Shown here: positions 43,010 through 63,385 of the stretch, in pieces
Layout of the letters: the number at the start of each line of letters is the position of its first letter
How positions within the stretch are numbered: position 1 is the first letter of the stretch
Virus record (IMG/VR): IMGVR_UViG_3300028654_000001
Span: 310,001-374,000 of that record
Length of the DNA: 64,000 bases
Strand: one strand, 5' to 3'
Translations under genes and position numbers: made by a program
The notes under the pieces: generated by a model
Told to the model about the DNA's origin: nothing
The model's database searches: none
Seen by the model: only the letters and a program-made list of their open reading frames with translations

Positions 43010-44638
43010 TCAGCTAAAGTGTGAGTTGATTTTATCTGTCATTACCGACAGCTCTTTGAGAGCCGCACAGAGTGAAGGATCCGATAGGTCTGACCCCGTG
43101 ATAAGACGAGAAAGCATACTAGAGATCCTATCCAAATCACCCTTGGCAACATGAGTGTTGTTCTTGGTACTGGCTTCGACCACACCAAGAGTACTCTCAA
43201 TCTTTGTCATAACAGAGTTAGCTAAGGCCTCGTTGATGATCGGGACGTCTTTGGATGCTAGCTTGTAATAGGTGGAGTCCCCACCATCAATCTCAGAAGA
43301 AGCGTCCTTATCCTTACCTTTTTGTAACCAAGGCGGGAGATCCTTCTTCTTATCCTTGTCTTCTCCACCCTTGTCAGCATCGTCCTTTTTGGACTCACCC
43401 TTACCGTGCTCTTCGTTGTACTTCTTCAGGGCAGGAGGAAGCTCACCAGCTTCCTTATCCTTCAGCCAAGGCGGGAGATCCTTCTTCTTGTCCTTGTCTT
43501 CTCCACCCTTATCAGAATTGTCCTTTTTGGACTCGCCTTTGCCGTGCTCTTCGTTGTACTTCTTCAAAGCTGGGGGAAGCTCACCAGCTTCTTTACCTTC
43601 ACCCTTGTCAGCATTATCCTTTTTGGACTCACCCTTACCGTGCTCCTCATTGTACTTTTTCAGGGCAGGAGGAAGCTCACCAGCAGTCTTTAGGTGATCA
43701 TAATCACCAAAGTCAATCCTACCCTTCTCGTGCTCTTCGAGGTCTGAAGCTAACTCCTTACGAAGTGCCGGTGGGAAGTACTTGGCATCATCTTCCTTGA
43801 TCCGGAACTCCCTCATGTAACGAGGAACTACCTTTGCATCAATGAAATGAGCCCACAATCTCGCCGCGGCGGACTTGTCGTAATTATCTTGATCCAGCCT
43901 ATGAATGAGATTTCGGACAATGACCATCCTATCTTGATAGAGAGCCCCCTCATTTTGGAGGTAGAGGTTCAGCTCTTCTTTAAGATCTGGGTCAACTGCA
44001 GCAGCGGTTTTCCCCAATACTGCTTCCAACATGTTCGCAGTAACCGCCTGAATCACAGTAATATCAGCCTCAGAGGCTGTAGTCCCTTCTTGATCCAGAG
44101 CGGTCAAAACCTTGGCTAGATCATCCATAGAGGCGTAGAAGTAGCCATTTGTACTCTGACCACTAGGCTTCTTCCCCAATTCGGAGACCATCCTAGAGAG
44201 GGAGTCAATGGCTCCATTGACTTGCTCATCACTGAGTGATCCAGAAGCGTGTTCTTTTGCAGTTTGCTCTAAAAGCTTGATATGCTCTTCGATCTCTGCA
44301 ATTTGCTGGGTGATCGCTTCAGCTTGTGTTGTCTCTTGGGTCATACCGGCGCCTCGAAAAGGTTGTCGAAAAACAATTGGGATAAACAGATCATCATGGC
44401 AGGCCCATCGAGACCGCTTGGGTTTCAGAAGCTCCTCTAAATCCTCTAGCTCTACTGAGATAATGGTCTTCCCATTTTTCAGGTAAGCATCCAAGGCCTT
44501 GCGGCACCTGTTGACACCGCGGACTAAGGTAGCCACAAGCTTCAAAACTGAAACGGATCCAAGATTGAGTTCTCGCCCATCAGGGAGGGTAGCGTAATCT
44601 CGAAACCCATCGGTAGAGACCGTGACCAGTTTAGCCAT
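43010..44638 (-). CDS. Modular probable internal head protein with Lys/Asp/Glu-rich repeats
   Basis: 542 aa: coiled coil, a discrete ELNLYLQNEGALY...YD..AA..LW domain, 3x AGELPPALKKYNEEHGKGESKKD and 2x DKDKKKDLPPWL. Confidence 0.7.
   Translation of the reverse strand: MAKLVTVSTDGFRDYATLPDGRELNLGSVSVLKLVATLVRGVNRCRKALDAYLKNGKTIISVELEDLEELLKPKRSRWACHDDLFIPIVFRQPFRGAGMTQETTQAEAITQQIAEIEEHIKLLEQTAKEHASGSLSDEQVNGAIDSLSRMVSELGKKPSGQSTNGYFYASMDDLAKVLTALDQEGTTASEADITVIQAVTANMLEAVLGKTAAAVDPDLKEELNLYLQNEGALYQDRMVIVRNLIHRLDQDNYDKSAAARLWAHFIDAKVVPRYMREFRIKEDDAKYFPPALRKELASDLEEHEKGRIDFGDYDHLKTAGELPPALKKYNEEHGKGESKKDNADKGEGKEAGELPPALKKYNEEHGKGESKKDNSDKGGEDKDKKKDLPPWLKDKEAGELPPALKKYNEEHGKGESKKDDADKGGEDKDKKKDLPPWLQKGKDKDASSEIDGGDSTYYKLASKDVPIINEALANSVMTKIESTLGVVEASTKNNTHVAKGDLDRISSMLSRLITGSDLSDPSLCAALKELSVMTDKINSHFS
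43325..43690 (-). repeat. Coding repeats (3 x ~23 aa plus 2 x ~15 aa)
   Basis: Near-identical nucleotide copies differing at synonymous sites. Confidence 0.85.
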
Positions 44639-44675
44639 CTGCTACGTAGAGGGCCTACAACAAGATTCACGAAAC

Positions 44676-44834
44676 CTATTCGCCTTCATCTTCATCCCAA
44701 GCAGTGGGTGGTGGACAGGGGATGGTATCCCTATCCATTCTGAAGTTTGGTACTAGAGGTGCACTCGGGATGATGGGATCCTTTAAGTCAGGTGCCCGTT
44801 CACCTGATCCCTCACTGGTAGCTATAGGGTTCAC
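44676..44834 (-). CDS. Small Pro-rich acidic protein (52 aa)
   Basis: Below ORF-track cutoff. GTG start 6 nt after the upstream stop; MNPIATSEGSGERAPDLKDPIIPSAPLVPNFRMDRDTIPCPPPTAWDEDEGE*. Confidence 0.5.
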   Translation of the reverse strand: MNPIATSEGSGERAPDLKDPIIPSAPLVPNFRMDRDTIPCPPPTAWDEDEGE

Positions 44835-44840
44835 ACCTAT

Positions 44841-45686: not shown

Positions 45687-45705
45687 CCTCGGTGACTACA
45701 CCGAG

Positions 45706-46500
45706 TTATGAGAAGTCGTAATTGTACTCTGAGGGGTTGCTCTTGGCTCCACAGGTACAAGCACCCTCGCACTTGCACTCAGTACCGCAGGTTCCATCAC
45801 AGGCCCCATCACAACCAGACTTCTGGACAGCTGCTCGAACGATGTCTCGAACATTAGAGATGGGTACCCCAGCAATGCGATCCGGAACTGGGATGTCCGC
45901 CACCTCACCAGAGCTATATCCTGAATAGATCTGCTCACTCGCAAACCGAGCTCCAAGTCCGTGACTTAAAAGAATGGTGATGACATTGCTGGCTTCCTTT
46001 GAGGTAAGATCTTTGATTGCATCCTGATCCACCGGCCACGAGAGCCCAGTATCATCCCATTGGACCTCCTCAGCTCGAGAAGCCATGCTCAGGATGAACT
46101 TGATCTGCTTATCTGAAGCTGGCGGCCCCTTTGAACCAGGTGCAGCATTACCACGCTGATCCCAGTATTCAGCCTTCTCCTCGTACAACTCCAGGTATTC
46201 TTCAATCTTGTCCTGTAAGGAGTTACGCCAGTTATTGGTTCTCTTTACAAGAAATGAACCTCCAACAAGTGGCTTGTCAATTTTAACTCCGAGGAATACG
46301 ACTCTAATAGAGTCATCCCCTGCTCCCGCTGAGTAACCACTCTTCATGATTGAAGTGTAGATTCGAATAACTACTGAAGGGCTCAATGACAAGTCATATA
46401 TAACCTGCCCTCGAAATGATCCCTCCTCAGGCCTCAATGCTCGGAAACCCCTTTTGAGGAAAGTTTCCATCTCCTTCAGAGTTACTTCAACGTAAGCCAT
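45706..46500 (-). CDS. Hypothetical protein with ASDKQ...EAS..I helical motif and Cys-rich tail
   Basis: 264 aa; PASDKQIKFI...LTSKEASNVITILL (DUF3072-like) and C-terminal CDGACDGTCGTECKCEGACTCG. Confidence 0.65.
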   Translation of the reverse strand: MAYVEVTLKEMETFLKRGFRALRPEEGSFRGQVIYDLSLSPSVVIRIYTSIMKSGYSAGAGDDSIRVVFLGVKIDKPLVGGSFLVKRTNNWRNSLQDKIEEYLELYEEKAEYWDQRGNAAPGSKGPPASDKQIKFILSMASRAEEVQWDDTGLSWPVDQDAIKDLTSKEASNVITILLSHGLGARFASEQIYSGYSSGEVADIPVPDRIAGVPISNVRDIVRAAVQKSGCDGACDGTCGTECKCEGACTCGAKSNPSEYNYDFS

Positions 46501-46501
46501 C

Positions 46502-49500
46502 TCAAAGCTCCTCAGAGTAAATGGAGTCTACTGGATCAGCAGAGGATTCCTTAGCCACCTCTTGCGGCTCAACACCTGGTTTGGATACGTTCTCACCAGG
46601 TGCCAGACCTGCATCAAAAACAAAGGGGCTCATCCCTTTCGGACAGGTAATCTCAAGATTGACTGCTGCTCGAGTCAAGGCCACATAGGCTAGGTTGCGT
46701 TCAGCCTTCATCCGAGACGCTTCCTGAACTGGATCCGGAGGTGGATCATCGGGCTTAGGTTTTCTCTCCATTGGAAAGAGCCCTTTGGGCATGACCACTG
46801 CCACATTCTGCCACTGAGCCCCCTTTACCGAATTATGTACGATTGCCCCACCACTCACGTAATACTCGTGAGGTAGTACCCGAAGACTGAACACCTCTCC
46901 GTGATAGGGCTCTCTTTCAACCTGAAGAACACTCCAGCAAGGTTTGGTCCAAGCCTTCTTAGTCCCAACACCTGTAACGAACTCCGATGATACCACCGGA
47001 AGTTCCATGTAACCACTCAAGAGGTTACATGCTCTAATCAAGAATGCAACACTATAATTGTTCTTCTTCTCTGGACCAAGACCCCTAACATAGAGTGGGT
47101 ACTTGATATCAAGACCATACTCTCTGAGCAAGTTCAAAGCCCTTGGAGCAACGTAGGATTTGGTGCTCTCATGTATAGCATGAAGCTGACCCGAAGAAAG
47201 AATTCGTCCATTTCCTTTTGTATCCTGGTAGGCTTCGAAGGTCACCCCTGGGATCCCATAAATGCCTTGGATAAGGCATTCCATCTTCATGGCTTCCGCC
47301 TTTGTAGAAAACACACCTAAAATCCAACCTGCATCAGCTTTCTCTGTACCTAAACGACCACCAACCCCACCAGCCTTATAGGGGCGTGTAGCAGAAACAC
47401 AGTGTCCAACTCTCCACCAATCCCCACGACGCATTAGATACACAACGTATTTATTCATGAAGCTGTTCGATAGCTTCACCAACAAACGATGATTAGGGGT
47501 TACTCTTGTCGTACTACTATCAGTCACAACCTTGATAAGATCCCCACTATAAGGACGACTACCCCTAACAAAAGCATAACCTTCATGGTGGGTAGTTGTC
47601 TTACTCCTCGGCCCTCGTTTACCCGAACGACCCCAAAAAAGTTGGTTACACCCCTTCATATATGAAGCTAAGCGATGCTTAGACTGGTTTAACTCCCCTA
47701 TCGGAACCCAGCCATCGGTGGTTAGAATCAACTCATCAGGGGGTGAGCAATGAACCGTAGAGAGCGTGATAGCCGGAGGCTTTTCCTTCCTTAGTCCTGG
47801 AGGTAACTCCTGTTGCTTCTTCTCCCACTTGGCAGGATCTACTCTAAGGGTAGCCGCGAGCTTCGAGTACCTAGCCAGCTTTTTGATGTAGCCATGGGCT
47901 AAGGCTGGATCAGTTGCTTCTTTCTGGTCGTTCTCATTGGGATGAGCCAATGAGAACAGGAACTGGACAGCCCCAAGCCCCTTACCTTGATTAGACTTCT
48001 CTTTAACCTTAAGAAGCCCCTCCTCGCCTAACTCATTATGGACGTCAGTTTCCTTGTCATCCTCATCTTCTACGTCCTGTTCATCATCGGAATAGATAGC
48101 GGCATCCTCAGAGATTTGCTCTCGCAAAGTTGCGGTTGCAAAGGATTCTGTTCTGGTTGCGGAATCCCAACTCTTGACCGTTGAGCTGGTATTATCCAAG
48201 ATGTAATTGAGGAGCTCCTCCGTCGTGTGGTTACCCTCAATGTACTCCTGAAGGTCTCTGATACCAGGAGCTATCCCACGTAGGGCATCTGCTAGGTCAT
48301 CAACTATACGACCATAGGCATATTCTGCAGTACTTATACTCTTCCCCTTACGTACCATAGAATCTACGATGGCTGCCCTATAGGGCATCTTAAGACGGTC
48401 AGCCAATACTCGTACATAACGAGAGTCCAGCAAGATGTCAGGTCTGACATTCCTCACGTCTACCCTCTGCTTGCGAGCTACCTCATCAAGGGCTTCGTCT
48501 ACTGCTTTCTCTAGGTCACTGTGACTTAGGCGCACCCCACGATCAGGCTTGGTAAGAATAGAGATGAGAGAGTCCCTCATCTTCTCATAGTCATTCCCGG
48601 TTGCTAGATCAATGTACCCAAGTACCGCTTTGGATTCGGGTGCCTCAAGAAAACCCCTTCCACCTCTACGAATGTAGGGGATCTCATTGATGATGCAAGC
48701 TGTTTCGAAGTCGTTGAGTTCAGCATTAGTCCTAGCTAATACTGCGAAGTCCTCTGTAGCAGCTCCCTCGTCGATATCCTTTCGGTACCGCCCAATGGTG
48801 TCAATAGCAGCTTCAACATTGGAATCCGGAACATTCACTTGAATAGAAGCTTGGCCCGGACTCTTTCTCGGATCAGACTTAGAAGCTATCACCGTTCCGT
48901 CACTGTCACGCTCGATGAGTCTGTTGGCAGCTTCCACAATCTCAGGTTGGCACCGGTAGTTGGTTCGAATGGTGCGAAGAGTCCAACCCTCATCTAAGTT
49001 CTGGAATAGCTCTGGTTTGGCCCCACGGAACTGGTAGATTGCCTGTTTCTCATCACCAACCATCCAAATTGACTTGTCCTTGGAGTCTTGTGGAATATGC
49101 TCAGAGAGCATACCAAAGATCTGGTGCTGAACCGTATTGAGGTCTTGAGCTTCATCCACGAGGATATGATCGAACATACCCTGCATGACTTCCTTAGCCT
49201 TCGGATCACGTCTCAAGATGTCCCTCAGGATCTTGAGCATGTCATCCATATCCCCTAGGCGCTCCTTGCCCCTACGGTTCTTCGACATGAAACTCTCGTA
49301 CGGCTTGGATGGGTTACACGGGGGAAGCCAACCAGGGATATCCCCCTTAAGCCCTAAGTACATCTCGTACCAGATCACAGCCTGAGCTTCAGCTTGTGAG
49401 TTGACGGATGCCTTAGCCTGCTCGAGAGTCACATCATTCCCACGCCAAGCGTTGAGGAGTAACCCTGCCTTCTTTGCCTGAGGTGGATTCTCTACCCACT

Positions 49501-50914
49501 TCCTGGGGTACCCGTAGCGAGATACCAAAGCATCTGGACCACACTCCATCCACATATTTCGGATGGTTAATGAAAGGCTAGAAGGGTTGATGGTTTTCTG
49601 CTTACCCCAAGGAGGGGCTACTAATCTCGGAGGAGTAAGCATCGCTTTCTCCTCTGGGGTCCCAAACCCAGGCTTCCCAGTAGTACCGATTAGGTTCTTG
49701 AACAAGGCGTGCATAGTCCCAACCTGCACCCCAGTGGTACCAACCACACCACTGAGCTTGCCCTTGATCTTGTCCTCCAACTCAACTGCTGCCTTTTTGT
49801 TGAAAGAACAAGCCATGATTCGAGCAGGGTTGACCCTTCCGTCCTTCACTAGATACTCGATACGAGATACCAGGGTCGTCGACTTCCCACTACCGGCGCC
49901 AGCCGCTACTCGAACCCTTCCACCGGTGAGAGCTGCTGCCCTCTGCTCATCATCCAGATGCTGCAATGGTACTGGTATGTTTTGGAGAATATTTGGGTCA
50001 CTGATGGCAGCCACTGCAACCGCAGTGGCAATACCAACAACCTCGGACTGCTTTGGAGGCTCATCAGGTTTTTGATTAATATCAAGAGATTTCTTGGCCG
50101 CAGCGGTAGCATTTACCTGAACAGTAGCCAACATTGCCGATCGGGAGTCTTGGGTGATCTGAGTCTCTTGTGCTCCAACCGCAGCCGATTCCTTGATACT
50201 CGTAGTTGTGAGAGCTATGGAGTCTTGGATCTCATTAGAAGCACTGTCCACCGGCTCTGGAGCAAACTGACCTGACCCTGCCTGCTTAGCCGCATCATCA
50301 ATCCAGTCCCTCATCCGAATGTTCAACATCGGAATTGCAGCAAATATGTCGAGAGCCTTGTCTGCATCGTCCAACATGGAGGCGGCAATGGATTGCTTGA
50401 CCTGTCGAACGTACTTGGGGTTCTCCAAGATCCCCTTCACAGTTGCAGTACCCCCTCGAGTAAGGAGGGTCCTGAACTGCAAGGCCCTTCGAGCGGCTCC
50501 CGCTGGGTTGAAGGCTTTCAGGTTCAGAGCTCTCCGAAGCATTGCCTTCTGTGATGGTTTTTCTAAGTGACTCTCGAGGAAGTCCCCGTAAGCATCAAGT
50601 TGGGTATCCGCCATCCGAAGGATGTGAAGACCCTTCTTGATGAGAGCATCTTCGGTATTATCAACCCCAGAGGTCTCTTCTGCGTACCTCTCGTACGTAT
50701 CCAGAGCCAACAGGAAGATGATGTACTCGGCGACCTGAAACTCACCAACGGGCTCATCTTCACCATCAGCAGGCGGCGCAGCAGCTCTCACCGTTGAGGC
50801 TATCGGAACCAACAGAGGGTTATTCCGAGCCCTAGCAAACAAGTTGGCTTGGGCTGGGCTCTCATCAATAGTCTGGGTCATCAGATTCTCCGGATCTACG
50901 TAGATGGCTTTCAA
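46502..50914 (-). CDS. uvrD: UvrD/PcrA/Rep SF1 helicase with ~310-aa N-terminal extension and an intein
   Basis: Motifs VAAGAGSGKST, SFNKKAA, GTMHA, ILVDEAQD, VGDEKQAIYQFRGA, TNYRC, AVLARTN, STVH|SVKGAQW and ERNLAYVALTRA. Confidence 0.95.
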   Translation of the reverse strand: MKAIYVDPENLMTQTIDESPAQANLFARARNNPLLVPIASTVRAAAPPADGEDEPVGEFQVAEYIIFLLALDTYERYAEETSGVDNTEDALIKKGLHILRMADTQLDAYGDFLESHLEKPSQKAMLRRALNLKAFNPAGAARRALQFRTLLTRGGTATVKGILENPKYVRQVKQSIAASMLDDADKALDIFAAIPMLNIRMRDWIDDAAKQAGSGQFAPEPVDSASNEIQDSIALTTTSIKESAAVGAQETQITQDSRSAMLATVQVNATAAAKKSLDINQKPDEPPKQSEVVGIATAVAVAAISDPNILQNIPVPLQHLDDEQRAAALTGGRVRVAAGAGSGKSTTLVSRIEYLVKDGRVNPARIMACSFNKKAAVELEDKIKGKLSGVVGTTGVQVGTMHALFKNLIGTTGKPGFGTPEEKAMLTPPRLVAPPWGKQKTINPSSLSLTIRNMWMECGPDALVSRYGYPRKWVENPPQAKKAGLLLNAWRGNDVTLEQAKASVNSQAEAQAVIWYEMYLGLKGDIPGWLPPCNPSKPYESFMSKNRRGKERLGDMDDMLKILRDILRRDPKAKEVMQGMFDHILVDEAQDLNTVQHQIFGMLSEHIPQDSKDKSIWMVGDEKQAIYQFRGAKPELFQNLDEGWTLRTIRTNYRCQPEIVEAANRLIERDSDGTVIASKSDPRKSPGQASIQVNVPDSNVEAAIDTIGRYRKDIDEGAATEDFAVLARTNAELNDFETACIINEIPYIRRGGRGFLEAPESKAVLGYIDLATGNDYEKMRDSLISILTKPDRGVRLSHSDLEKAVDEALDEVARKQRVDVRNVRPDILLDSRYVRVLADRLKMPYRAAIVDSMVRKGKSISTAEYAYGRIVDDLADALRGIAPGIRDLQEYIEGNHTTEELLNYILDNTSSTVKSWDSATRTESFATATLREQISEDAAIYSDDEQDVEDEDDKETDVHNELGEEGLLKVKEKSNQGKGLGAVQFLFSLAHPNENDQKEATDPALAHGYIKKLARYSKLAATLRVDPAKWEKKQQELPPGLRKEKPPAITLSTVHCSPPDELILTTDGWVPIGELNQSKHRLASYMKGCNQLFWGRSGKRGPRSKTTTHHEGYAFVRGSRPYSGDLIKVVTDSSTTRVTPNHRLLVKLSNSFMNKYVVYLMRRGDWWRVGHCVSATRPYKAGGVGGRLGTEKADAGWILGVFSTKAEAMKMECLIQGIYGIPGVTFEAYQDTKGNGRILSSGQLHAIHESTKSYVAPRALNLLREYGLDIKYPLYVRGLGPEKKNNYSVAFLIRACNLLSGYMELPVVSSEFVTGVGTKKAWTKPCWSVLQVEREPYHGEVFSLRVLPHEYYVSGGAIVHNSVKGAQWQNVAVVMPKGLFPMERKPKPDDPPPDPVQEASRMKAERNLAYVALTRAAVNLEITCPKGMSPFVFDAGLAPGENVSKPGVEPQEVAKESSADPVDSIYSEEL
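46832..47749 (-). mobile_element. Intein (306 aa) in helicase motif V
   Basis: Begins CSPPDELILTTDGWVPIGEL, has block B TRVTPNHRLLV, ends VFSLRVLPHEYYVSGGAIVHN followed by Ser. Removal restores LSTVHSVKGAQW. Confidence 0.93.
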
Positions 50915-50931
50915 TAGAAAGGCAAACGGTT

Positions 50932-52842: not shown

Positions 52843-52846
52843 GACT

Positions 52847-52945: not shown

Positions 52946-55900
52946 CTAGATCCTAGCTCTAAGGTTGAATGTTAAGACGATATAGAGCAAGGGAAAAATT
53001 GGAGCATAATATGCTACAGCATTCAATATCGTTGGATCATTAGGATCTACCGTAGCGGCGATACCGGTGAAGGCCGAGACGATCTCCTGCTGGATCAACT
53101 GCTTGAAGAGGGAGGTCATCGAGACCTCGACTTCATTGGTTCGACTCGACAGGAACTTGGTACCTACGTACGCGTCAAGGACTGACCTGGAACTGATCGA
53201 GACGTAGTCAGCGATCTGGGTTACCGTGGGCAACCGGGTCAGGATGTTCGTCATGTTGGTCGTGAGACCCTGACGGATCCGGATGATCGGCTGCAGATCT
53301 TCCAGGATTGTGATACCAGCCGTGGCCGTTTGATTGGCTTCGACCGGATCCATGATCCTGGGAATCTGGGTGAACCCTTGGAGCTGACGCCTCGTGTACG
53401 GGGTAGCAACATCCACAGCCGGGGAGCACACAGCACCGGCGACGGCCGCCGCGAAGAAGGTCCCATCCACCAGAGACTGGTAGGTGTTCCCGAGCTCGTC
53501 GGTGAAGGTGACTACTACCGAATCCGGGTAGAGAGCCACGATTCTCGAACTGAACAAGGACTTCGCAATGGTCTGAGCCACGGTGGGGGTTGTTCCACTG
53601 GCAAATCCGATCATACCCATCCGCTCACTCTGGTTGCGAATGTTTGACATGACTTCACAGTGCTGAGTCAGGTACGAGTACACTGCTGTATCCGTGCTGA
53701 GGGGCACAATGACGTCAGGCTTGACGTTACCGGGAAGAGGAGCAGCCAACCCTTGAATAGCCGTTATGAAGGACTGTGCAGAGGCCTGGTTCGTATTTGG
53801 AACCTTGAGAACCTGCTTGATCCCGACAAGAACAGCACCATTGAGGATGGCCAAGTAGGCACCCAGAGTAACCCTGTTCTCAGCATTGAGTGGGCCGTAA
53901 ACACCCTCAATAGTCTTGAACTGAGAGTACAGCTTCGTCGAGAAGTCCTGCTTCATGTAGTAGTAACTAATGAAGTAGAAATCCCCGTTGGCGGGCTCAA
54001 CCCCAGAAGGATTGAACGTCTCGATGTTAGCTGTGTCATTCACTCCAATCCCAACCGTATTGGCCACGATGGTCTCGAGGCCCGGAATTGAATAGAATGG
54101 CGCTCCTGGATTCACAGAGAATGTCTGTGAAGCAATCAGGGTGAAGTGGCCTGCACTGTCGTAGTGCCCAGTGGTAGACGGTAGAATCGTGAACCTAAGG
54201 CCTGTACGAGCATCCGTATAGGTCTGACCTGGGTACCCTATACCAGATGATCCATTGACCGTATCCGAAGAGGTAACCGCAAATTTGTCGGTGGCATCCT
54301 CACCATCGTCCCCAGAGATCCCAGGAACAATTCCAGTCCCAGTGAGGGTATTGAAGGCCGTAGAGGCTACGAACCCAATGCTGCTGGTGATGCCCGTCGT
54401 CAGGGACTCAATGGTGACATAAGTCTGGCCATTGAGGGTTGACGGATAGGCAACTGCACCAGTATCGAACCCAGATGTGCCCATGAGGGAGTCAACTACC
54501 TCTTGAGCCGATACCAAAGTCTGGCTCGCGAAAGATCCTTGGCTGAACCCAAGGAGGGTATTCGCTGTACCATCACCAATCAGAACTGCAGACTGAGTCT
54601 GATTGGTGTTACTTGTGATCCGGATCTTACCAGCATTTGCTAGAGTACCGTCAGTAGCCGAACCTTGTGAGGTTACTACGGCATTGATCTGTTTAGCAAT
54701 TACACTCGCTGACATTGACTCGATGTCAATCGAAATCGTACCATCGAAGGTAGCTGTTGGGATAATGCTCAACGAACCAGTGCTGGTAGCTGTAACCGAA
54801 ATCACAGTTGTGTCCGCTACCCCTGCAGTTGTGACACCACCAAAGACTACGTCAACTGTACCAGCTGTTGACGTGATGGTAATGGTAATGGTGTAGACTG
54901 CACTAATTATAGCAGCTAGTGGGTTAACCAAAGCTGCTACATTACCAACACCAGCCGTATGGGTGAAGGTATTGTAGGTTGTCGTCCAATTAGTCCCAGT
55001 GTACCCCGTGGTTGGTGTAATCCCATTAGAGAGGGTTGTTGTGAAGTCAACCCCATTGAGCCTCACCTGGAAGGTGTCATTCACACCGGCAACAACTGTA
55101 AAGGGTTCTGCAACTGCTCCCAAGATGGTTGCAGGCTTGTTGACGGATCCTGTAGTTCCAAGAGCCTGTTCAAAGGTCTTGAACCCAAGTAGGGTCTCTG
55201 CCGTGCCTTGAGCAACATAAACTGAGCTGACAGAATCAAACCCACCGGGAAGTGCCCCAGGGGTCGTGTTGCTCTTGATCAGGAAGAAGGTTGAGGTTCC
55301 GCCGAATGCCGGTATAGCTGTTGCAGTGGCGGGAGTGATAACACCACTAATAGCCGATGCAACTGTTGATGGGGTTCCTGATGTCAGGGTTACTGTATGA
55401 GCAACCCCATCAATCACTAGGTTCAGGACATCATCTACCCCAGTGGTGAATACAACATCACCGCCGGTGAGGACAACTGCCTGACTAACCAGAGTAGCAG
55501 GTCTTGTTGTAAGTAGATTGGTGCTTACCGGAGTACTATTGACATTGGTGATCCAAGTCGCTGAAGCTGAGTAGAACGAGTAAGGCTGGGCCCCTTCGTT
55601 CGTGTAGACAGCATTGCGTGCCGGAGCCTGACCAAAGGTCACTGTAACGGTCTCTGAAACTGGTGCCCCAGCTCCCGTGTAGAGTGCATCCGGGATATAT
55701 TCAACACCACGGGGCCACTGCACGATCTCTGAGAGTCCACCCTTGGTTCCGAATCGAACCTGGTATAGGTTCGTATTCAAGAGTGAGGAGAACACGGTGT
55801 ACTGCCCAACCCCTACCGGGCCGGCAACCGTATTGGTCAGGATATAGGTATCATCTTCGATTCGGTTGTAATAGAACGTCGCGTAGACATTCCAATCAGC

Positions 55901-57463
55901 CGGAATAGAATCCCTCAGAGTGATCTTTCGGTTTGAACCGTCAACTGCAACTACGGTAGCTGCTGGATGACCTAAGGCATCCGAGAGGGTTCGACCTACT
56001 CGAGCAATGACCAAGTCGGGACGGTTCGTGACCACATCTTGTCGGCTATTGGTAACTGACGAGAAGAGGGCAGAGCCCAAAGTCGTGTCTCTACCGTTAC
56101 CTGTGGTGGGGATCTCAGGCAATAGAAACACTGTGTTACTGATCACAGCTGGGATGACCGAAGTATCTGCAAACCTAGTGCAAGGTGCCAGATACATCTT
56201 GTTATCAACAAGAGTCGGAATGATCTGAGTGTTGTCGAAAGGGGTTGCACCAGGAGTCTGCAACGTAGAGGATACCGAATAACTGGTACCCCAGTGGACA
56301 ATCGAGACATCCGGAGTCGGGTTCTTAATGACGAAGTCCGCACCCTGAATGTAGTCGGAACGTCCAGGACTGATGCCTGCCCTGATGACACTAGTCACCA
56401 ACGGGTTTGGCAAATAGTCGAAAGTATCCTGCCAGGTATTCGCCCAATAGTTGATCGTAACAACGGCTCCTGGAGGAGGCGCGAGAGTCAAAGTTACAAT
56501 ACCGTTGGTACCATCCACAGCTGAGGGGATTACCTGGACGTTGTTCACCTTTACGACAACCTTTGAGGTGTCAGTTGTGGTGATACCACCAGAGGTTCCG
56601 TCGACGATCGGGCGTTGGAACACCCTGAACTGAGTGTTACCACTCACAAGCTGATTACTCGAGAGACCAAGAATGCCATTTGCATTTCCTGAACCGATCT
56701 GAATCGAGGAGACCGCTGTGAGCTGTAGGTGAGTTGCATTTTGATTGTCAGTGAATACTGATGCAACTCCAACACCCAAGGCTGCTGTGATCTGAGTCAC
56801 TAAGCTTGCAGTAGAAGCAGTGGGAGAAGCCTGGAATACAACTGTCCGTAGGGATCCACCATTGAGGGCTACCTGAAGGGTGTCATTCACACCAGTGATA
56901 ATGTTGAACGGTCCAAAACCAGGGGTGATGATCGTCTGAGGGGCCTCACTAACCTGATAGGACACATTATCCGTAAAGGCCGTGTCAGAACGGTGGAAGA
57001 AGTATGTTACCCGAACGGTGTCCGATGGCTGAGGTGGTACTTGAAGGGTTAGGATACCAGCAGAGCCATTGACGGACCCCACCGCGACAGGAGAGCCATT
57101 GACGGTAACGGTCACATTTCGAACATCGTTTGTGACTCGACCGAAGCCCTCACCATCAACTATCGGAGTGTTCCGAACTCTGAACTGAGTTCGGGTACCA
57201 TCCTGAGCACCCAAAATCGGGTTACTTGGATTTGTAGTGTCCACAATCCATTCAGCGGAAACGTCTTCATTGACGATCTGCTCGTCAAGAGTAGAGGAAG
57301 ATCCTCTAACCATCTCGAGGTCGCTTACCTGGAGTTGTTCTTGACCTACACCGATTATGAAGGGAATACGAATGCCAGCTACGAGGGCTGCAACGTTTGC
57401 ATCGGTTAGTGTGCGGGAGTAAACACCTGGTTGAACATATGTCGAAAATGGTCCCAAACTCAT
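52946..57463 (-). CDS. Tail sheath protein with multiple inserted domains
   Basis: N-terminal YVQPGVYSRT; C-terminal sheath core (HCEVMSNIRNQSERMG, AAAVAG, GITILE...IRIRQGLTT, YYAPIFPLLYIVLTFNL). Confidence 0.93.
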   Translation of the reverse strand: MSLGPFSTYVQPGVYSRTLTDANVAALVAGIRIPFIIGVGQEQLQVSDLEMVRGSSSTLDEQIVNEDVSAEWIVDTTNPSNPILGAQDGTRTQFRVRNTPIVDGEGFGRVTNDVRNVTVTVNGSPVAVGSVNGSAGILTLQVPPQPSDTVRVTYFFHRSDTAFTDNVSYQVSEAPQTIITPGFGPFNIITGVNDTLQVALNGGSLRTVVFQASPTASTASLVTQITAALGVGVASVFTDNQNATHLQLTAVSSIQIGSGNANGILGLSSNQLVSGNTQFRVFQRPIVDGTSGGITTTDTSKVVVKVNNVQVIPSAVDGTNGIVTLTLAPPPGAVVTINYWANTWQDTFDYLPNPLVTSVIRAGISPGRSDYIQGADFVIKNPTPDVSIVHWGTSYSVSSTLQTPGATPFDNTQIIPTLVDNKMYLAPCTRFADTSVIPAVISNTVFLLPEIPTTGNGRDTTLGSALFSSVTNSRQDVVTNRPDLVIARVGRTLSDALGHPAATVVAVDGSNRKITLRDSIPADWNVYATFYYNRIEDDTYILTNTVAGPVGVGQYTVFSSLLNTNLYQVRFGTKGGLSEIVQWPRGVEYIPDALYTGAGAPVSETVTVTFGQAPARNAVYTNEGAQPYSFYSASATWITNVNSTPVSTNLLTTRPATLVSQAVVLTGGDVVFTTGVDDVLNLVIDGVAHTVTLTSGTPSTVASAISGVITPATATAIPAFGGTSTFFLIKSNTTPGALPGGFDSVSSVYVAQGTAETLLGFKTFEQALGTTGSVNKPATILGAVAEPFTVVAGVNDTFQVRLNGVDFTTTLSNGITPTTGYTGTNWTTTYNTFTHTAGVGNVAALVNPLAAIISAVYTITITITSTAGTVDVVFGGVTTAGVADTTVISVTATSTGSLSIIPTATFDGTISIDIESMSASVIAKQINAVVTSQGSATDGTLANAGKIRITSNTNQTQSAVLIGDGTANTLLGFSQGSFASQTLVSAQEVVDSLMGTSGFDTGAVAYPSTLNGQTYVTIESLTTGITSSIGFVASTAFNTLTGTGIVPGISGDDGEDATDKFAVTSSDTVNGSSGIGYPGQTYTDARTGLRFTILPSTTGHYDSAGHFTLIASQTFSVNPGAPFYSIPGLETIVANTVGIGVNDTANIETFNPSGVEPANGDFYFISYYYMKQDFSTKLYSQFKTIEGVYGPLNAENRVTLGAYLAILNGAVLVGIKQVLKVPNTNQASAQSFITAIQGLAAPLPGNVKPDVIVPLSTDTAVYSYLTQHCEVMSNIRNQSERMGMIGFASGTTPTVAQTIAKSLFSSRIVALYPDSVVVTFTDELGNTYQSLVDGTFFAAAVAGAVCSPAVDVATPYTRRQLQGFTQIPRIMDPVEANQTATAGITILEDLQPIIRIRQGLTTNMTNILTRLPTVTQIADYVSISSRSVLDAYVGTKFLSSRTNEVEVSMTSLFKQLIQQEIVSAFTGIAATVDPNDPTILNAVAYYAPIFPLLYIVLTFNLRARI

Positions 57464-57561
57464 GGTAAATCTCCTAACTAGAACGATTGATCTACATTTG
57501 GTACGATTTAATCTAGTTGGATCTGATAAAGGGTCTTTACTTGATGCTCATTTGATTTGAT

Positions 57562-58308: not shown

Positions 58309-58402
58309 TGTCGAGTCTTTGGCCTTAAAGAGGTTACAAGTGAAATATTTAGCAGTTAGCCAATATTAGAAACAGAAAAGAGGCAGCAGCGAAGTTGAGC
58401 CT

Positions 58403-58840: not shown

Positions 58841-58852
58841 CGTGGTCTCATT

Positions 58853-60019
58853 TCATGTAATTCGTTCATAGTTTGCATTTCTACCAACGATGATGGGTAC
58901 CGTTGAAAAGAAAAGATCAGTATCAGAAATAACCTTAATCCCAGAGGTCCCATCCGGTTGAGTTGCAGCCGAAGCCCCACTGATCGTGAAAGGTAGCGGA
59001 ATGTGAACTTCCCAGTCTGACTGGACCTGGATACTCATCGAGGCTGTATAGTAAAAGGTGTCGGACACCTCATCATAAGCCTCTTCGGCTTCACCACCGA
59101 TCGATATTTCAGTGATCTCCAACCCCTCAAAGGATAGGTTGGGTCTCTTCTCACTCCAAAGAGACATGTGAGCATAGTCGGCCATCTCTTCCATCTGCAT
59201 GGGGTCCTGAGCTATGATATCGATGTCAAACGATACCTCGAACTTCCCACCATAGGCTGTCGCGGTGTCTACACGGTCATCATAGACAACAACCGCAACT
59301 TTGTCCCCCTTCTTACCTCGTTTTCCAAAGGCTAGGATAACTCCTGGAAGAGTCCTCCAGTCCGCGGTGTTCCACTTCCACTCAATAGGCCCAATTGACT
59401 CCACTGGATAACGATAATCAGCGGTCAAGATCTGACCTGGCAACAAATCCGCCGTAATGGTTATCTCACCTGTTGAGTAATCTACCGTGTAGTCTTTACC
59501 CTCATAGAACGGCAACTTTCTATTGATCCAGATCCGAAGTGTACCTTGGATCGGAGGAGGCTGAATAAGAGCATGGCTTTCAACCCCGGACACAACCTGA
59601 AGCAACGGAAAATCAGTCACGGTCAAAAGGGGGTCTATTACGAAGTGCCCTATCTCATTTGGGTTGGTCGGAGCGTCCAGGCACTCTATATAATAGACCC
59701 CCGCTGGAATCGGCATCGAACCCCCGTTGGCCTTTACTGTATTCACATCCTCCTTTACCCACTCCAAGATATAGGAGGGGGTATCGAAGTAGGACAGCAT
59801 GACGTGACTCTCAACAGTCCCTAACAGGTTTTGAGCAGACAACTTCAGGTTGTTTGCAGAGGACCCCTTAACAACGATACCGAATGCTGGTCGTTCGTCG
59901 AATGCATACTTATTTTGTATAAATGGAACTACCTTCTCATATACTGGATGACGAGAAAAGCTATCCTGAAGCTCAAGAATGAGCCTCCTCTTCAACGATG
60001 ATAATAAGTAATAGTAAAT
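58853..60019 (-). CDS. Neck / tail-terminator-like virion protein
   Basis: Upstream of the sheath; FEVSFDIDIIAQDPMQMEEMADY...YYTASMSIQVQSDW. The ORF track starts at TTG 59995, but the frame extends to ATT 60019 (IYYYLLSSLKRRL). Confidence 0.65.
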   Translation of the reverse strand: MYYYLLSSLKRRLILELQDSFSRHPVYEKVVPFIQNKYAFDERPAFGIVVKGSSANNLKLSAQNLLGTVESHVMLSYFDTPSYILEWVKEDVNTVKANGGSMPIPAGVYYIECLDAPTNPNEIGHFVIDPLLTVTDFPLLQVVSGVESHALIQPPPIQGTLRIWINRKLPFYEGKDYTVDYSTGEITITADLLPGQILTADYRYPVESIGPIEWKWNTADWRTLPGVILAFGKRGKKGDKVAVVVYDDRVDTATAYGGKFEVSFDIDIIAQDPMQMEEMADYAHMSLWSEKRPNLSFEGLEITEISIGGEAEEAYDEVSDTFYYTASMSIQVQSDWEVHIPLPFTISGASAATQPDGTSGIKVISDTDLFFSTVPIIVGRNANYERIT

Positions 60020-60034
60020 TGGACCCTGGCCTCT

Positions 60035-60205
60035 CTAGTGTGCGCACCTATCAACCTTATTAGATTGATAGGTTTTTTGGTTGTGGGCCCTCTTACCCTC
60101 TTCACTTAGATTGTGGTAGCGTTTATTAGAACGACGCTTAGAGCACACCATACAGTGACCCCACTTATCGCGTTCAGGGCTACCACATTTACTACAAGGT
60201 TTCAT
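60035..60205 (-). pseudogene. 56-aa zinc-finger mini-ORF, probable N-terminal stub of an HNH/EndoVII homing endonuclease
   Basis: MKPCSKCGSPERDKWGHCMVCSKRRSNKRYHNLSEEGKRAHNQKTYQSNKVDRCAH*: Cys4 finger plus basic helix, no nuclease domain. Confidence 0.6.
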
Positions 60206-60211
60206 AGTACA

Positions 60212-61231: not shown

Positions 61232-61268
61232 AGGTCTACCTTTTCATCTGTTATCTGTCTGATTTAGC

Positions 61269-61964
61269 TCAGACCTTCCAAGGGTCTGAGATGAGTCTCT
61301 GCTTGAGAAGGTACACGTGTGACTCGTGCTTGTCCTCAACTCCTGCAAGAAGGTTGTCTGCCCCTCGAGTAAGCTCACCATGGTTCTTCATCTCGGCAGC
61401 GATAGCAGCCAAGCTTGAGATGAAGTGTTCCTCAGCCTTGAGGCTTGATTCCATGAAAACGTGTGGGTTAATCTCTTGTTGGGCAAGACCATCACCACAG
61501 AACATGTGCACGGTCTTGGCAATCAACGAAGCTTGAAGTCCCGGGTGCAGCTTGTCCTTAGGGCAACCCAATCCAACAGCCTTCTCGGCAATCTGATCTG
61601 CTTCCTCAGCAGTCTCGTTGTAGAGCCTTTCGAAGAGGAGGTGATCGGCGTAGTAAGTATCCCCATAAGTCAGCCAGTGGTGTCCTTGATGGATCTGAGC
61701 CAAAGCTCTCACGAACACGAGGGCTGTAGGCAACCCAAGACCTTCACCGTGGGCTAACTTGGAAGCAATGGTGTGTGCTGTCTTCATCGAGGCTGATTTG
61801 TCCATTCGAACTTTCATTCCGGGCAAGTAAGGTGGCCCATGAAAGAAGGGGTTGTATGACGATGGATCTTGCCAGATCACGAAAGTGGCATCATCCGGTG
61901 GGGTGTTGGTTGGACTAACACCTGGATGCTCTGGATTCGGACGAAAGAAGTCTGAATCAGTCAT
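61269..61964 (-). CDS. dps: Dps/ferritin-like protein with N-terminal extension
   Basis: HQGHHWLTYG..YYADHLLFERLY...EADQIAEK carries the Dps ferroxidase H, H, D, E pattern; C-terminal DNLLAGVEDKHESHVYLL. Confidence 0.85.
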   Translation of the reverse strand: MTDSDFFRPNPEHPGVSPTNTPPDDATFVIWQDPSSYNPFFHGPPYLPGMKVRMDKSASMKTAHTIASKLAHGEGLGLPTALVFVRALAQIHQGHHWLTYGDTYYADHLLFERLYNETAEEADQIAEKAVGLGCPKDKLHPGLQASLIAKTVHMFCGDGLAQQEINPHVFMESSLKAEEHFISSLAAIAAEMKNHGELTRGADNLLAGVEDKHESHVYLLKQRLISDPWKV

Positions 61965-63385
61965 GTCAGCCTATCTTCCAATTGCTTGGAGATGACAGCT
62001 GCAACAATGGCTAACCTCTTAACCTTTGGCTGTAGCCCAGCCAACAGGAGAGCCGGGTACTGAGTAGAACCCTCACCAGCCTCTTTGAGACTGAAAGCAC
62101 TCTTCTGAGCCTCACCTAGCGCAGCTAAAACCTCATTGAATGCGTTACCTATGGCCACGATAGCGGGGTGTTCATCACCAGCAGTGATGAAGTCCTCTGC
62201 AATGACTGAAGACTTTCTGAACCATAGGTGAGGGGCTAGGGTGTTGGCGGGAATTGACTTCTTCATATAACGAAGGATCTCTTCGTCATTCTTCACCTCA
62301 GGTCGACTATCATCGACCACGATCTTGTCCCCTTCCCACTTAGCGAAGTTCTTGCCTCCCAGTCCATTCTTTTCGAGTTCCTTGCCATCAGTGGTGAGCA
62401 TCCCACCATGAGCCGGTTTCCTCTCATAGAAGGCATCAACAACCTTCTTCTCGGCTGCAGTCAGGGCTGCGGTAACTTCTGTGGCGGCAAGTTTCACAAG
62501 AGCATGAGACCTCTCGAGACCATCGGGCTCCTTGAGTCTTTCAACCAACTCAAATGGCCCCACCCCCTCCGCTTGAAGAATGATAGCGTCCTTCGGGTCA
62601 TATCCCTTAGAGGCCAGCAAAGCTTGTAACTCTTGAAGCTCGGCCTCTCTGGGGTCATAAACTGGCTCTGTTGGCTCCCCAACCTCGCCCAACGCTAGCC
62701 TCTCGGGATCCGCAATGAACGACTTTCCGGTATAAGGAGACTTCATAGAACCCTTCCTACGAAGAGCCATGTAGAATTTCTGCCCATCCGAGTCCGTGTA
62801 CTGCCATATAACGTTGGTCTTGTTACCTTGAGCTCTAAGCTCTTTGGCAACCGCAGTGAGGTTAACTCGAACTGGATGGCCAGGGAAGGTACTCCCGCTA
62901 AAGGGATCTCGCATCATACCAGCCCTCTTCTCAGGAAGATAGAAAGTTACCCCATCGTCCCCCACATACTTCCACAAGACCGTGGAAGCTGCAGCTGTCT
63001 TCTCAGCTTTGTTGATCTCCCCAAAGTTCATCTTCTCACCCTTTGGGGTAAAGCTTCTTCCTGTGTAGGGAGACTTCAACGTTCCGGTGACCCGCTCCGG
63101 AAGGTAGAAGGTGGATCCGTCACCATCGGTATACTTCCAGAGAGCCCCCTTGACCTTGGCCTCATCCTCCTTGAGTTCCTTGCCAACATCCGAGAGGGAA
63201 GATCTTTCAGGATTAGCTGTAAAGGACTTACCAGTGTGCGGGGACTTTAACGTTCCAACTTTCTTCTCTGAGAGGTAGAAGTCCTTGCCCTCCTCGTCTG
63301 TGTACTTCCAGAGCACTGTAGCCGCGATCTTACTTTGAATGGAAGCCGCTCGTGCTAAAAGTGCCTGCTTGGGATCAGTCGTCAT
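61961..63385 (-). CDS. Modular probable internal head protein with four ~55-aa repeats
   Basis: 4x (V/A)LWKYTD.DG..FYL.....G.LKSP.TGKSF...PER followed by two or three unrelated short domains. Confidence 0.75.
   Translation of the reverse strand: MTTDPKQALLARAASIQSKIAATVLWKYTDEEGKDFYLSEKKVGTLKSPHTGKSFTANPERSSLSDVGKELKEDEAKVKGALWKYTDGDGSTFYLPERVTGTLKSPYTGRSFTPKGEKMNFGEINKAEKTAAASTVLWKYVGDDGVTFYLPEKRAGMMRDPFSGSTFPGHPVRVNLTAVAKELRAQGNKTNVIWQYTDSDGQKFYMALRRKGSMKSPYTGKSFIADPERLALGEVGEPTEPVYDPREAELQELQALLASKGYDPKDAIILQAEGVGPFELVERLKEPDGLERSHALVKLAATEVTAALTAAEKKVVDAFYERKPAHGGMLTTDGKELEKNGLGGKNFAKWEGDKIVVDDSRPEVKNDEEILRYMKKSIPANTLAPHLWFRKSSVIAEDFITAGDEHPAIVAIGNAFNEVLAALGEAQKSAFSLKEAGEGSTQYPALLLAGLQPKVKRLAIVAAVISKQLEDRLT
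62700..63320 (-). repeat. Four diverged coding domain repeats
   Basis: WKYTD/FYL/KSPYTGKSF units are visible in protein and DNA; boundaries approximate. Confidence 0.8.

What the first reader, a model, noticed from the sequence alone, without database searches (positions are those of the whole stretch)
43010..63385. Candidate protease-processed capsid-cargo system: shared K/R-x-A-[A/G/S] motifs at domain borders of Dps, two polyproteins and neighbours
Seen: non-structural-looking genes are interleaved in the late structural operon, and short basic-x-Ala motifs fall at their module edges. In 43010-44638 a discrete domain is bracketed by LGKTAAA and HLKTAG, later repeats start after KEAG, and the block ends KDAS / KLAS. 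In 61961-63385 repeats 1 and 3 start after SKIAA and EKTAAA, and the next module follows VKLAA. In Dps, DKSAS-MKTAH-SKLAH sits just before the ferritin fold. 45706-46500 has ARFAS between domains, and UvrD has a weaker VRAAA in its extension. Established: T4 gp21 and phiKZ gp175 prohead proteases cut internal head proteins at short motifs ending in Glu. Inference: this phage uses an Ala-specific equivalent to release small cargo domains from packaged polyproteins, and may deliver Dps and a helicase along with its DNA.
Basis: partly seen in the sequence, partly recalled or inferred. Interest (0 to 1): 0.8.

Follow-up and report, generated by a model that had tools for sequence, protein, structure and literature searches.

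The report
Ala-type head-protease sites on phage cargo
A short basic-x-Ala-small motif that marks module borders in three proteins of this huge soil phage also flanks the phage's own herpesvirus-like head protease, is packed into its scaffold protein and sits at the capsid protein's N-terminus, so it is most likely the protease's cutting site and would mark a Dps-like protein and two modular proteins as processed head cargo.

Summary
The motif [KR]-x-A-[AGS] is enriched in the 542-aa protein (8 found, 1.7 expected) and the 474-aa protein (6 found, 1.8 expected). Tail proteins show no excess (17 vs 20.8), and reversed or permuted motifs show none either. An AlphaFold model of the 542-aa protein places the conserved motifs in the low-confidence gaps between confident domains. 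Homologues as low as 35% identical keep the motifs across large insertions and deletions.

The operon is a tail operon of a 512-kb phage related to Bacillus phage G. I walked about 30 kb beyond the window and found the phage's own head module. Its scaffold-like protein has 9 motifs against 0.9 expected. Its capsid protein starts with KTAA-GRA-KLAA-S. Its protease carries RKAS just before a core whose best structural matches are herpesvirus assemblins, which cut after Ala. All 46 distinct scaffold C-termini in the clade have the motif 21-27 residues from the end.

The Dps-like family has a conserved N-terminal peptide, then the motif, then the ferritin fold. The UvrD claim fails: its motifs lie in helicase core motifs or are not conserved.

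Cleavage and packaging remain inferred. No virion mass spectrometry exists for this phage.

The parts
43010..44638 (-). 542-aa modular protein and candidate protease substrate: N-domain (res 1-74), helical region, helical-bundle domain (217-318), disordered ELPPALKKYNEE / LPPWL repeats (321-458), and a C-terminal three-helix domain (465-541).
   Evidence: AF2 model. Alignment A1. The family of 46 homologues has 261 motifs vs 67.5 expected. It shares the 'K-x-A-G-ELPPAL' module with the scaffold-like protein of LR745208.1.
44000..44011 (-). KTAA (res 210-213), the junction before the 217-318 domain.
   Evidence: Lies inside the pLDDT<50 segment 209-213. Kept in L002 and in L003, where about 35 upstream residues are deleted, and across the family.
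43679..43690 (-). KTAG (res 317-320), the junction after the 217-318 domain.
   Evidence: Borders the pLDDT<50 segment 319-323. Reads KNAG in L002 and KVAG in L003, and K[TKV]AS in distant homologues.
43265..43678 (-). Disordered repeat block holding KEAG (43583-43594 and 43445-43456) and KDAS (43298-43309). KLAS (43253-43264) follows it, just before the last domain.
   Evidence: Tandem DNA repeat at 43328-43692 with periods 138 and 96. pLDDT below 50. KEAS and YYKLA[AS] are conserved down to about 35% identity.
44345..44410 (-). Linker after the N-domain, with RWAC (res 77-80) and RGAG (res 95-98).
   Evidence: pLDDT<50 segment 75-101. Homologues read RWA[AG] and RGAS at these positions.
61961..63385 (-). 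474-aa modular protein and candidate substrate: two pairs of about 35-aa LWKY repeats (possibly cysteine-less zinc-ribbon-like), then three further modules.
   Evidence: The family of 50 homologues has 180 motifs vs 68 expected. 39 of 101 repeats are preceded within 3-5 residues by the motif, against a 6% background. The zinc-ribbon likeness is a weak lead only.
63320..63331 (-). KIAA (res 19-22), before repeat pair 1.
   Evidence: Reads K/R-[IT]-[AS]-A in the family and PKTAAT in L011, about 36% identical.
62990..63001 (-). KTAA (res 129-132), before repeat pair 2.
   Evidence: Conserved in all four-repeat homologues.
62483..62494 (-). KLAA (res 298-301), after the 'KGYDPKDA...GLER' module.
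   Evidence: In L012, an otherwise different protein, the same module is flanked by FKSAAS and KKKTAAS.
61269..61964 (-). Dps/ferritin-like protein with a 75-residue N-terminal extension: conserved peptide W-x-DP..Y....HGPPYLP (61821-61883), KSAS (61788-61799), ferritin core (61317-61703), and a C-terminal DPWKV (61272-61286).
   Evidence: Pfam Ferritin E=2.6e-4 and PHROG 3636. In the family of 1293 hits, the 150 representatives show this architecture, with motif density 1.65 per 100 aa upstream vs 0.39 in the core.
45706..46500 (-). 264-aa protein of unknown function, a conserved neighbour of UvrD. Weak candidate only.
   Evidence: 3 motifs vs 0.62 expected, conserved only in close relatives. 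Adjacent to a UvrD-like gene in LR745208.1 as well.
46502..50914 (-). UvrD-family helicase. Not part of the system as far as the evidence goes.
   Evidence: Pfam UvrD E=9e-40. Its motifs fall in helicase core motifs or are not conserved.
52946..57463 (-). Tail sheath (context: shows this is a tail operon).
   Evidence: tblastn hits to the tail sheaths of Tunturi_5, phage G gp178 and actinophages. 0 motifs vs 1.56 expected.
58853..59995 (-). Tail-terminator-like protein (context).
   Evidence: Matches Tunturi_5 gp324, annotated 'tail terminator'.
42197..42922 (-). Probable tail tube protein (context).
   Evidence: 50% identical to virion structural protein gp329 of Tunturi_5, which lies just downstream of that phage's sheath gene.

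Best explanation
The window comes from a 512-kb phage of the Bacillus-phage-G lineage. Its head maturation protease has a herpesvirus-assemblin-like fold. The most likely reading is that this protease cuts at [K/R]-x-A followed by S, A or G. By analogy with assemblin the cut would fall after the Ala, but the exact bond is unknown.

On this reading the sites do several jobs:
- trim the protease itself;
- cut the scaffold-like core protein into pieces and detach its conserved C-terminal peptide;
- probably remove about 25 residues from the capsid protein.

The same sites occur in three proteins encoded in the tail operon of the window. They sit at the linkers of the 542-aa and 474-aa modular proteins, and after a conserved N-terminal peptide of the Dps/ferritin-like protein. 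These three are therefore most likely co-assembled into the prohead and processed there, like the internal head proteins of T4 and phiKZ/SPN3US.

Shown: the motif, its enrichment, its position at module borders, its conservation, and its presence in the protease, scaffold and capsid proteins. Inferred: cleavage, the scissile bond, packaging and delivery.
For: Window statistics and controls.

Domain borders: AF2 model.

Conservation across insertions and deletions and across module shuffling.

The phage's own head module:
- scaffold-like protein 9 vs 0.9;
- neighbouring 243-aa protein 4 vs 0.53;
- capsid protein with KTAA..KLAAS at residues 16-27;
- protease with RKAS at residues 38-41.

Relatives:
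- Tunturi_5 protease has KTAA at residue 33 and KVAS at residue 265. Its scaffold-like gp332 has 9 vs 2.4. Its capsid protein reads KSAAGRQKLAAS.
- LR745208.1 scaffold-like protein has 11 vs 3.1.
- Phage G protease gp19 has four motifs flanking its core against 0.64 expected.
- Across about 45 clade proteases, R-[VIT]-A-[SAG] is near-invariant at residues 24-27 while its flanks vary.
- All 46 distinct scaffold C-termini have the motif 21-27 residues from the end, upstream of a conserved peptide.

Protease fold: the top five structural matches are herpesvirus proteases, with Z 10.4 to 7.9. Assemblins cut after Ala before Ser/Thr, and their M-site frees the scaffold C-terminus (PMC4498786).

Dps family architecture.

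A ferritin-like protein, gp346, was reported in phage G particle proteomics (bioRxiv 10.1101/2024.12.16.628780), and it is weakly homologous to the window's Dps-like protein.
Against: - No mass spectrometry or N-terminal data exist for this phage or any motif-bearing relative that I could read.
- The three window genes lie in the tail operon, about 30 kb from the head module.
- Phage G's capsid protein, scaffold candidates and ferritin-like gp346 lack the motif, so the rule is not lineage-wide.
- In many clade capsid proteins the first site reads KTP[AG]; only KLAAS is invariant. The conserved capsid N-terminus could be a structural helix that is kept rather than removed.
- The assemblin match is moderate (TM 0.3-0.4, and unrelated folds reach Z of about 7), and I did not map the catalytic residues.
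- The phage G particle proteome lists over half of its nucleic-acid enzymes, so detection there is weak evidence.
Confidence: 0.6

Rival explanations
1. The motif is a conserved linker or module-junction signature that is not cut. It could be a helix-capping or flexible hinge sequence, or a short binding motif, spread by shuffling of small modules among these proteins.
For: The motifs sit in disordered linkers. Modules such as 'KEAG-ELPPWLK' and 'SRFEEGKPADPTENMS...KFKSAA' move between the 474-aa and 542-aa families with the motif attached. Other short motifs (LPPxL, DPWK) recur in the same proteins.
Against: This does not explain several things: why the motif flanks the catalytic core of the protease in four distant phages, why it precedes the conserved scaffold C-terminal peptide in all 46 cases, or why it lies at the capsid-protein N-terminus. 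The reversed and permuted motifs are not enriched.
Confidence: 0.2
2. The sites are cut, but by a protease other than the prohead protease, or outside the prohead. In that case the window proteins are processed polyproteins that need not be head cargo; they could be neck or tail-associated factors, or intracellular ones.
For: The genes lie between the connector/'minor tail' genes and the tail terminator, sheath and tube genes. That order is kept in L009 and L011. An M23 peptidase is encoded in the same operon.
Against: M23 enzymes are cell-wall hydrolases. Co-occurrence of the motif in protease, scaffold and capsid proteins points to the head protease. Tail proteins are not enriched.
Confidence: 0.12
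3. Chance or composition: Lys- and Ala-rich low-complexity sequence, plus selection of the motif after the fact.
For: The motif was defined after looking. Three of the eight instances in the 542-aa protein are copies of one repeat. UvrD and the 264-aa protein are not convincing.
Against: Same-composition controls are flat. Proteins chosen by homology rather than by motif (scaffold, 243-aa, protease, capsid) give 16 vs 3.9. Three protein families from hundreds of metagenomic phages repeat the pattern.
Confidence: 0.03

Closest known systems
T4 gp21 prohead protease with internal proteins IPI-III, Alt and the scaffold gp22 (capsid targeting sequence system)
   Same: A head protease trims itself, the scaffold, the capsid protein and packaged internal proteins at a short three-residue motif. 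Cargo carries an N-terminal peptide that is removed (PMC9026906, PMC3012670; established knowledge).
   Different: The T4 motif is L/I-x-E, cut after Glu. Here it is K/R-x-A followed by a small residue. There is no sequence similarity to gp21. The cargo genes lie in a tail operon. Cleavage is not shown.
phiKZ gp175 / SPN3US gp245 protease and their inner-body or ejection proteins
   Same: Giant phages in which many head proteins, some with several sites in a propeptide, are cut at a three-residue motif, and enzymes are packaged and ejected (PMC10052503, PMC5694885).
   Different: Their motif is A/S/G-x-E. They belong to a different phage lineage (nucleus-forming chimalliviruses). The cargo here is a ferritin-like protein and small-module proteins, not RNA polymerase.
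Herpesvirus assemblin (protease pUL26N / VP24) with its R- and M-sites
   Same: Best structural matches of the protease model. Assemblin cuts after Ala before Ser/Thr, for example YLQA-T and VQA-S. Its M-site detaches a short scaffold C-terminal peptide that binds the capsid protein (PMC4498786). That layout matches the scaffold C-termini seen here.
   Different: P3 is basic here, against V/L/Y-type residues in herpesviruses. The protease here has a Cys-rich insertion. There is no detectable sequence similarity. The catalytic triad was not verified.
P1 Dar system (DarB and others)
   Same: Large enzymes, including a helicase/methylase-type protein, are targeted to the capsid by an N-terminal signal and delivered with the DNA (PMC9024508).
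   Different: No shared sequences. The helicase in this window shows no targeting or cleavage signature.
Encapsulin nanocompartments with ferritin-like cargo
   Same: An HK97-fold shell that would enclose a ferritin-fold protein recruited by a short terminal peptide (established knowledge).
   Different: Here the shell is a DNA-filled virion. The proposed signal is N-terminal and would be removed by a protease. No homology to encapsulin targeting peptides was tested or seen.

Membership tests
Assemblin-like prohead proteases (herpesvirus / T4 gp21 / HK97-type fold) | Characteristic beta-barrel protease fold | tested here: met
   AF2 model of residues 1-320 has a core at 34-253 with pLDDT 77-95. 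The top five matches are VZV, PRV, HSV-2 and HCMV proteases, Z 10.4-7.9 and Foldseek probability 0.92. The margin over unrelated folds (Z about 7) is moderate.
Assemblin-like prohead proteases (herpesvirus / T4 gp21 / HK97-type fold) | Ser-His-(His/Glu/Asp) catalytic residues in the right places | tested here: inconclusive
   His57, Ser63, Asp65 and Glu128 are invariant in 24 sequences. I did not superpose them on the assemblin triad.
Assemblin-like prohead proteases (herpesvirus / T4 gp21 / HK97-type fold) | Gene lies next to the scaffold and major capsid genes | tested here: met
   The order protease, scaffold-like, decoration-like, capsid protein is seen in L102, L020 and Tunturi_5. The Tunturi_5 homologue hits PHROG 18299, 'head maturation protease'.
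Assemblin-like prohead proteases (herpesvirus / T4 gp21 / HK97-type fold) | Demonstrated cleavage of scaffold and capsid proteins | not testable with these tools
   Needs virion mass spectrometry or an in-vitro assay.
Protease-processed internal head (cargo) proteins, T4 IP / phiKZ inner-body type | Carries the same short motif as the protease's known substrates (self, scaffold, capsid protein) | tested here: met
   Not met for UvrD.
Protease-processed internal head (cargo) proteins, T4 IP / phiKZ inner-body type | Motif lies in accessible linkers or after an N-terminal propeptide | tested here: met
   542-aa protein: AF2 low-confidence segments. Dps family: motif follows the conserved N-terminal peptide. 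474-aa family: motif lies 3-5 residues before the repeat pairs.
Protease-processed internal head (cargo) proteins, T4 IP / phiKZ inner-body type | Protein present in purified heads in processed form | not testable with these tools
   The only indirect hint is that phage G ferritin-like gp346 is listed in particle proteomics (bioRxiv 10.1101/2024.12.16.628780). It lacks the motif.
Dps / ferritin-like superfamily | Four-helix ferritin-like domain detectable by profile | tested here: met
   Pfam Ferritin, residues 88-216, E=2.6e-4, which is below the gathering score. PHROG 3636 E=2e-8. 1293 homologues found.
Dps / ferritin-like superfamily | Ferroxidase-centre residues and dodecamer assembly | not tested

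The most novel reading that the evidence does not exclude
A whole clade of abundant huge soil phages uses an assemblin-like protease with herpesvirus-type 'after-Ala' specificity. These phages load their capsids with a Dps/ferritin-like protein and small-module proteins through short removable peptides, working like an encapsulin inside a virion. The recurring acidic-x-W-K motifs would be part of this. Examples are DPWKV at the Dps C-terminus, up to five DPWKA copies in relatives, and ILAWKV/A at other C-termini. They would mimic the conserved scaffold C-terminal peptide (..DLSKLWESAPD..) and tether cargo to the shell until the protease releases it.
Probability: 0.2. Interest if true: 0.85.

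Novelty: new variant of a known kind. Interest (0 to 1): 0.66.

Why it matters
Protease-processed head cargo is known only from a few model phages, all of which cut after Glu. If confirmed, a basic-x-Ala rule would have several uses.
- It would give a sequence-only way to read the packaged proteome of a very abundant, almost uncultured clade of huge phages. Their capsid protein occurs on more than 2000 protein clusters.
- It would link phage and herpesvirus proteases by specificity as well as by fold.
- It would suggest that a DNA-protecting or iron-handling ferritin-like protein travels with the genome.
- It would provide targeting and release tags for loading foreign proteins into such capsids.

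Tried and rejected
- **No near relatives by DNA.** megablast of the region against phages found nothing. tblastn of the 542-aa and 474-aa proteins against phages also found nothing.
- **281-aa protein as the protease; 369-aa and 435-aa proteins as the capsid protein.** I guessed this from gene order. BLASTP and hhalign against the Tunturi_5 protease and capsid protein rejected it. The Atlas hints (DHH-like, tail-chaperone-like) are weak.
- **542-aa protein vs Tunturi_5 gp332.** No detectable homology.
- **A shared C-terminal 'targeting domain' in the 474-aa and 542-aa families.** hhalign gives probability 1%.
- **Protease profile against PDB sequences.** Nothing found.
- **Fold search with the 542-aa model.** Only generic helical bundles.
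- **Unbiased tripeptide enrichment.** It is swamped by internal repeats. K.AS or R.AS still reached the top ten in three unrelated scaffold-like proteins.
- **Finding our contig's capsid protein.** It did not appear among the best 120 proteins or the best 80 loci. Walking along the contig found it.
- **The phage G structure paper (PMC7316594).** Not held, so I could not check whether cleavage sites were already reported there.
- **The Dps N-terminal peptide (GPPYLP) on other proteins.** Not found in the loci fetched.
- **Rfam.** No matches in the window.

Full report
**What the window is.** Almost all genes from 8770 to 63840 lie on the minus strand. The nearest records are LR745208.1 (an uncultured 485-kb phage), Tunturiibacter phage Tunturi_5, and more distantly Bacillus phage G.

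The 'late structural operon' is a tail operon:
- 52946-57463 is the tail sheath.
- 58853-59995 is tail-terminator-like.
- 42197-42922 is 50% identical to a virion protein encoded just downstream of the Tunturi_5 sheath gene, and is probably the tube.
- Downstream come a long probable tape-measure protein, an M23 peptidase, baseplate J and large fibre-like proteins.

The genes interleaved in this operon are the 474-aa protein, the Dps-like protein, an actin-fold protein, a zinc-ribbon protein, two homing endonucleases, UvrD, and the 264-, 281- and 542-aa proteins.

**The observation.** Per-protein shuffles give:
- 542-aa: 8 found vs 1.67 expected.
- 474-aa: 6 vs 1.77.
- 264-aa: 3 vs 0.62.
- UvrD: 8 vs 4.2.

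Tail and baseplate proteins are at or below expectation. Three of the eight motifs in the 542-aa protein belong to one recently duplicated unit.

The candidate set totals 34 vs 8.3 for [KR]-x-A-[AGS]. The reversed motif, three permutations, an acidic version and a Leu version all stay near expectation (6-12 against 7-10 expected). Nineteen tail proteins give 17 vs 20.8, and the other interleaved genes give 9 vs 8.1. Composition therefore does not explain the excess.

**Module borders.** The AlphaFold model of the 542-aa protein was built on 41 homologues. It has confident domains at 1-74, 217-318 (pLDDT above 90) and 465-541. The segments with pLDDT below 50 are 75-101, 209-213, 319-323 and 334-459.
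- KTAA (210-213) falls inside one of these gaps. KTAG (317-320) straddles the C-terminal edge of the 217-318 domain and runs into the next gap.
- RWAC/RGAG, the two KEAG motifs and KDAS lie in the other gaps. KLAS (459-462) begins at the last residue of the 334-459 gap and precedes the C-terminal domain.
- The one motif inside a domain (KSAA at 255) is also the one not conserved in L003.

In the 474-aa family the LWKY repeats come in pairs. 39 of 101 repeats have the motif 3-5 residues upstream, against a 6% background.

**Conservation.** In L003, which aligns to the 542-aa protein at 37-57% identity, the motifs survive large deletions. The 542-aa family has 261 motifs vs 67.5 expected, and the 474-aa family has 180 vs 68.

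Modules move between the two families with the motif attached. The KEAG-ELPPWLK unit of the 542-aa protein occurs in the 474-family protein of L011. The 'KGYDPKDA' module is followed by KLAA here, and is flanked by KSAAS and KTAAS in an otherwise different protein in L012.

The head module is not in the window. Tunturi_5 has a protease (gp331, PHROG 18299), a 528-aa protein (gp332) and the capsid protein (gp334, PHROG 2522). LR745208.1 has the same set.

Walking along our own contig reached its head module about 30-34 kb beyond the right end of the window. It contains:
- the protease, L102:1593-3263, 37% identical to gp331;
- a 479-aa Gln-rich scaffold-like protein;
- a decoration-like protein;
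- the capsid protein, L102:5539-6408.

The motif results are:
- scaffold-like proteins: 9 vs 0.9 (own), 11 vs 3.1 (LR745208.1) and 9 vs 2.4 (Tunturi_5);
- all three capsid proteins carry K-[TS]-A-A-G-R-x-K-L-A-A-S at about residues 16-30;
- the proteases carry the motif at the edge of the core: RKAS at 38 in our phage, KTAA at 33 and KVAS at 265 in Tunturi_5, and four sites in phage G gp19 against 0.64 expected;
- in about 45 clade proteases, R-[VIT]-A-[SAG] at residues 24-27 is almost invariant while its neighbours vary;
- all 46 distinct scaffold C-termini have [KR]-[VTS]-A-[SAG] 21-27 residues from the end, followed by a conserved peptide, with two more sites just upstream.

**The protease.** The AF2 model has a core at residues 34-253 and a disordered N-terminus. 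By Foldseek and by VIA-align it matches herpesvirus proteases best: VZV Z 10.4, PRV 8.9, HSV-2 8.5 and HCMV 7.9. Assemblins cut after Ala before Ser/Thr, and their M-site detaches the scaffold C-terminal peptide that binds the capsid protein (PMC4498786). The scaffold C-termini here have the same layout. The known phage examples cut after Glu instead: L/I-x-E in T4 and A-x-E in SPN3US (PMC10052503).

**Dps.** The search over 1.84 billion cluster representatives found 1293 relatives. Among the 150 best representatives the usual layout is W-x-DP..Y....HGPPYLP, a few residues, [KR]-x-A-[AS], about 30 residues, and then ferritin helix A. Motif density is 1.65 per 100 aa upstream against 0.39 in the core.

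The LR745208.1 homologue lacks the extension and lies beside a GroEL-like gene, so the extension looks like an add-on. A phage G preprint lists a ferritin-like protein, gp346, in particle proteomics (10.1101/2024.12.16.628780). It is a weak homologue with a long N-terminal extension but no motif.

**What fails.** Five of the eight UvrD motifs lie in or beside helicase core motifs, VRAAA is not conserved, and UvrD with the 264-aa protein forms a pair found elsewhere in LR745208.1. Phage G's capsid protein and scaffold candidates lack the motif. The first capsid site is KTP[AG] in many clade members.

**Verdict.** The motif is real, specific and under selection at module borders. The best reading (about 0.6) is that it is the cutting site of an assemblin-like head protease, and that the 542-aa, 474-aa and Dps-like proteins are processed head proteins. 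Cleavage, the scissile bond and packaging are inferred. This is a new variant of a known kind of system.

Noticed in passing
window 60212-61231 (-): A 339-aa protein matches the Pfam Volactin family (actin fold, described in Haloferax) full-length with E=1.7e-61. It sits between the Dps-like and tail-terminator-like genes. A 47%-identical copy holds the same position in LR745208.1, and ORFs of similar size hold it in L009 and L011. An actin homologue conserved inside a phage tail gene cluster is unexplained.
   Followed up: partly
L004:4190-6548 (about window 66838-69196, beyond the right end): The head-tail connector homologue (Tunturi_5 gp319) is in pieces. A 253-aa N-part is followed by a 326-aa MucR/DUF559 endonuclease ORF, then a 210-aa ORF with intein splicing motifs whose end matches the connector C-terminus. 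This looks like an intein or homing-endonuclease invasion, with a stop codon between the parts.
   Followed up: partly
window 57562-58308 (-), 50932-52842 (-), 7113-8003 (+): Three homing-endonuclease-type genes (GIY-YIG, MucR+HNH, LAGLIDADG) are inserted among the structural genes. More lie near the capsid gene (two LAGLIDADG ORFs in L102). The UvrD homologue of LR745208.1 carries an intein.
   Followed up: no
L102:1593-2552 (protease), alignment A5: The head protease family has a conserved Cys cluster (C-x6-C-x2-C ... C-x-H) inserted in the core. It gives weak zinc-finger (MYND-type) matches. This is unusual for assemblin-like proteases.
   Followed up: no
window 61272-61286; L011:9968-11032; P0040, P0041, P0045: A second short motif, acidic-x-W-K-[AV], recurs: at the C-terminus of the Dps-like protein, at the C-termini of other modular proteins, and up to five times inside relatives. 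It often lies a few residues after a K-E-A-S site. It resembles the conserved LW in the scaffold C-terminal peptide.
   Followed up: partly
The capsid protein is extremely conserved: at least 87% identity in the best 120 of 2094 protein clusters, with 491 IMG/VR loci. Neighbouring head proteins are only 25-50% identical. The clade is very abundant in metagenomes.
   Followed up: no
window 2-4990 (-) and 5108-6796 (+): An open reading frame of at least 1663 codons runs off the left end of the window on the minus strand. Next to it, on the plus strand, is an RCC1-repeat protein. Tunturi_5 also has RCC1-type giant tail-region proteins.
   Followed up: no
L016:2974-6735 (-), about window 74456-78217: A 1253-aa double glycosyltransferase-2 gene lies on the opposite strand, in the middle of the structural genes.
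   Followed up: no
L105:4341-5888 (LR745208.1): A GroEL-like chaperonin gene lies beside the extension-less Dps-like gene of LR745208.1.
   Followed up: no
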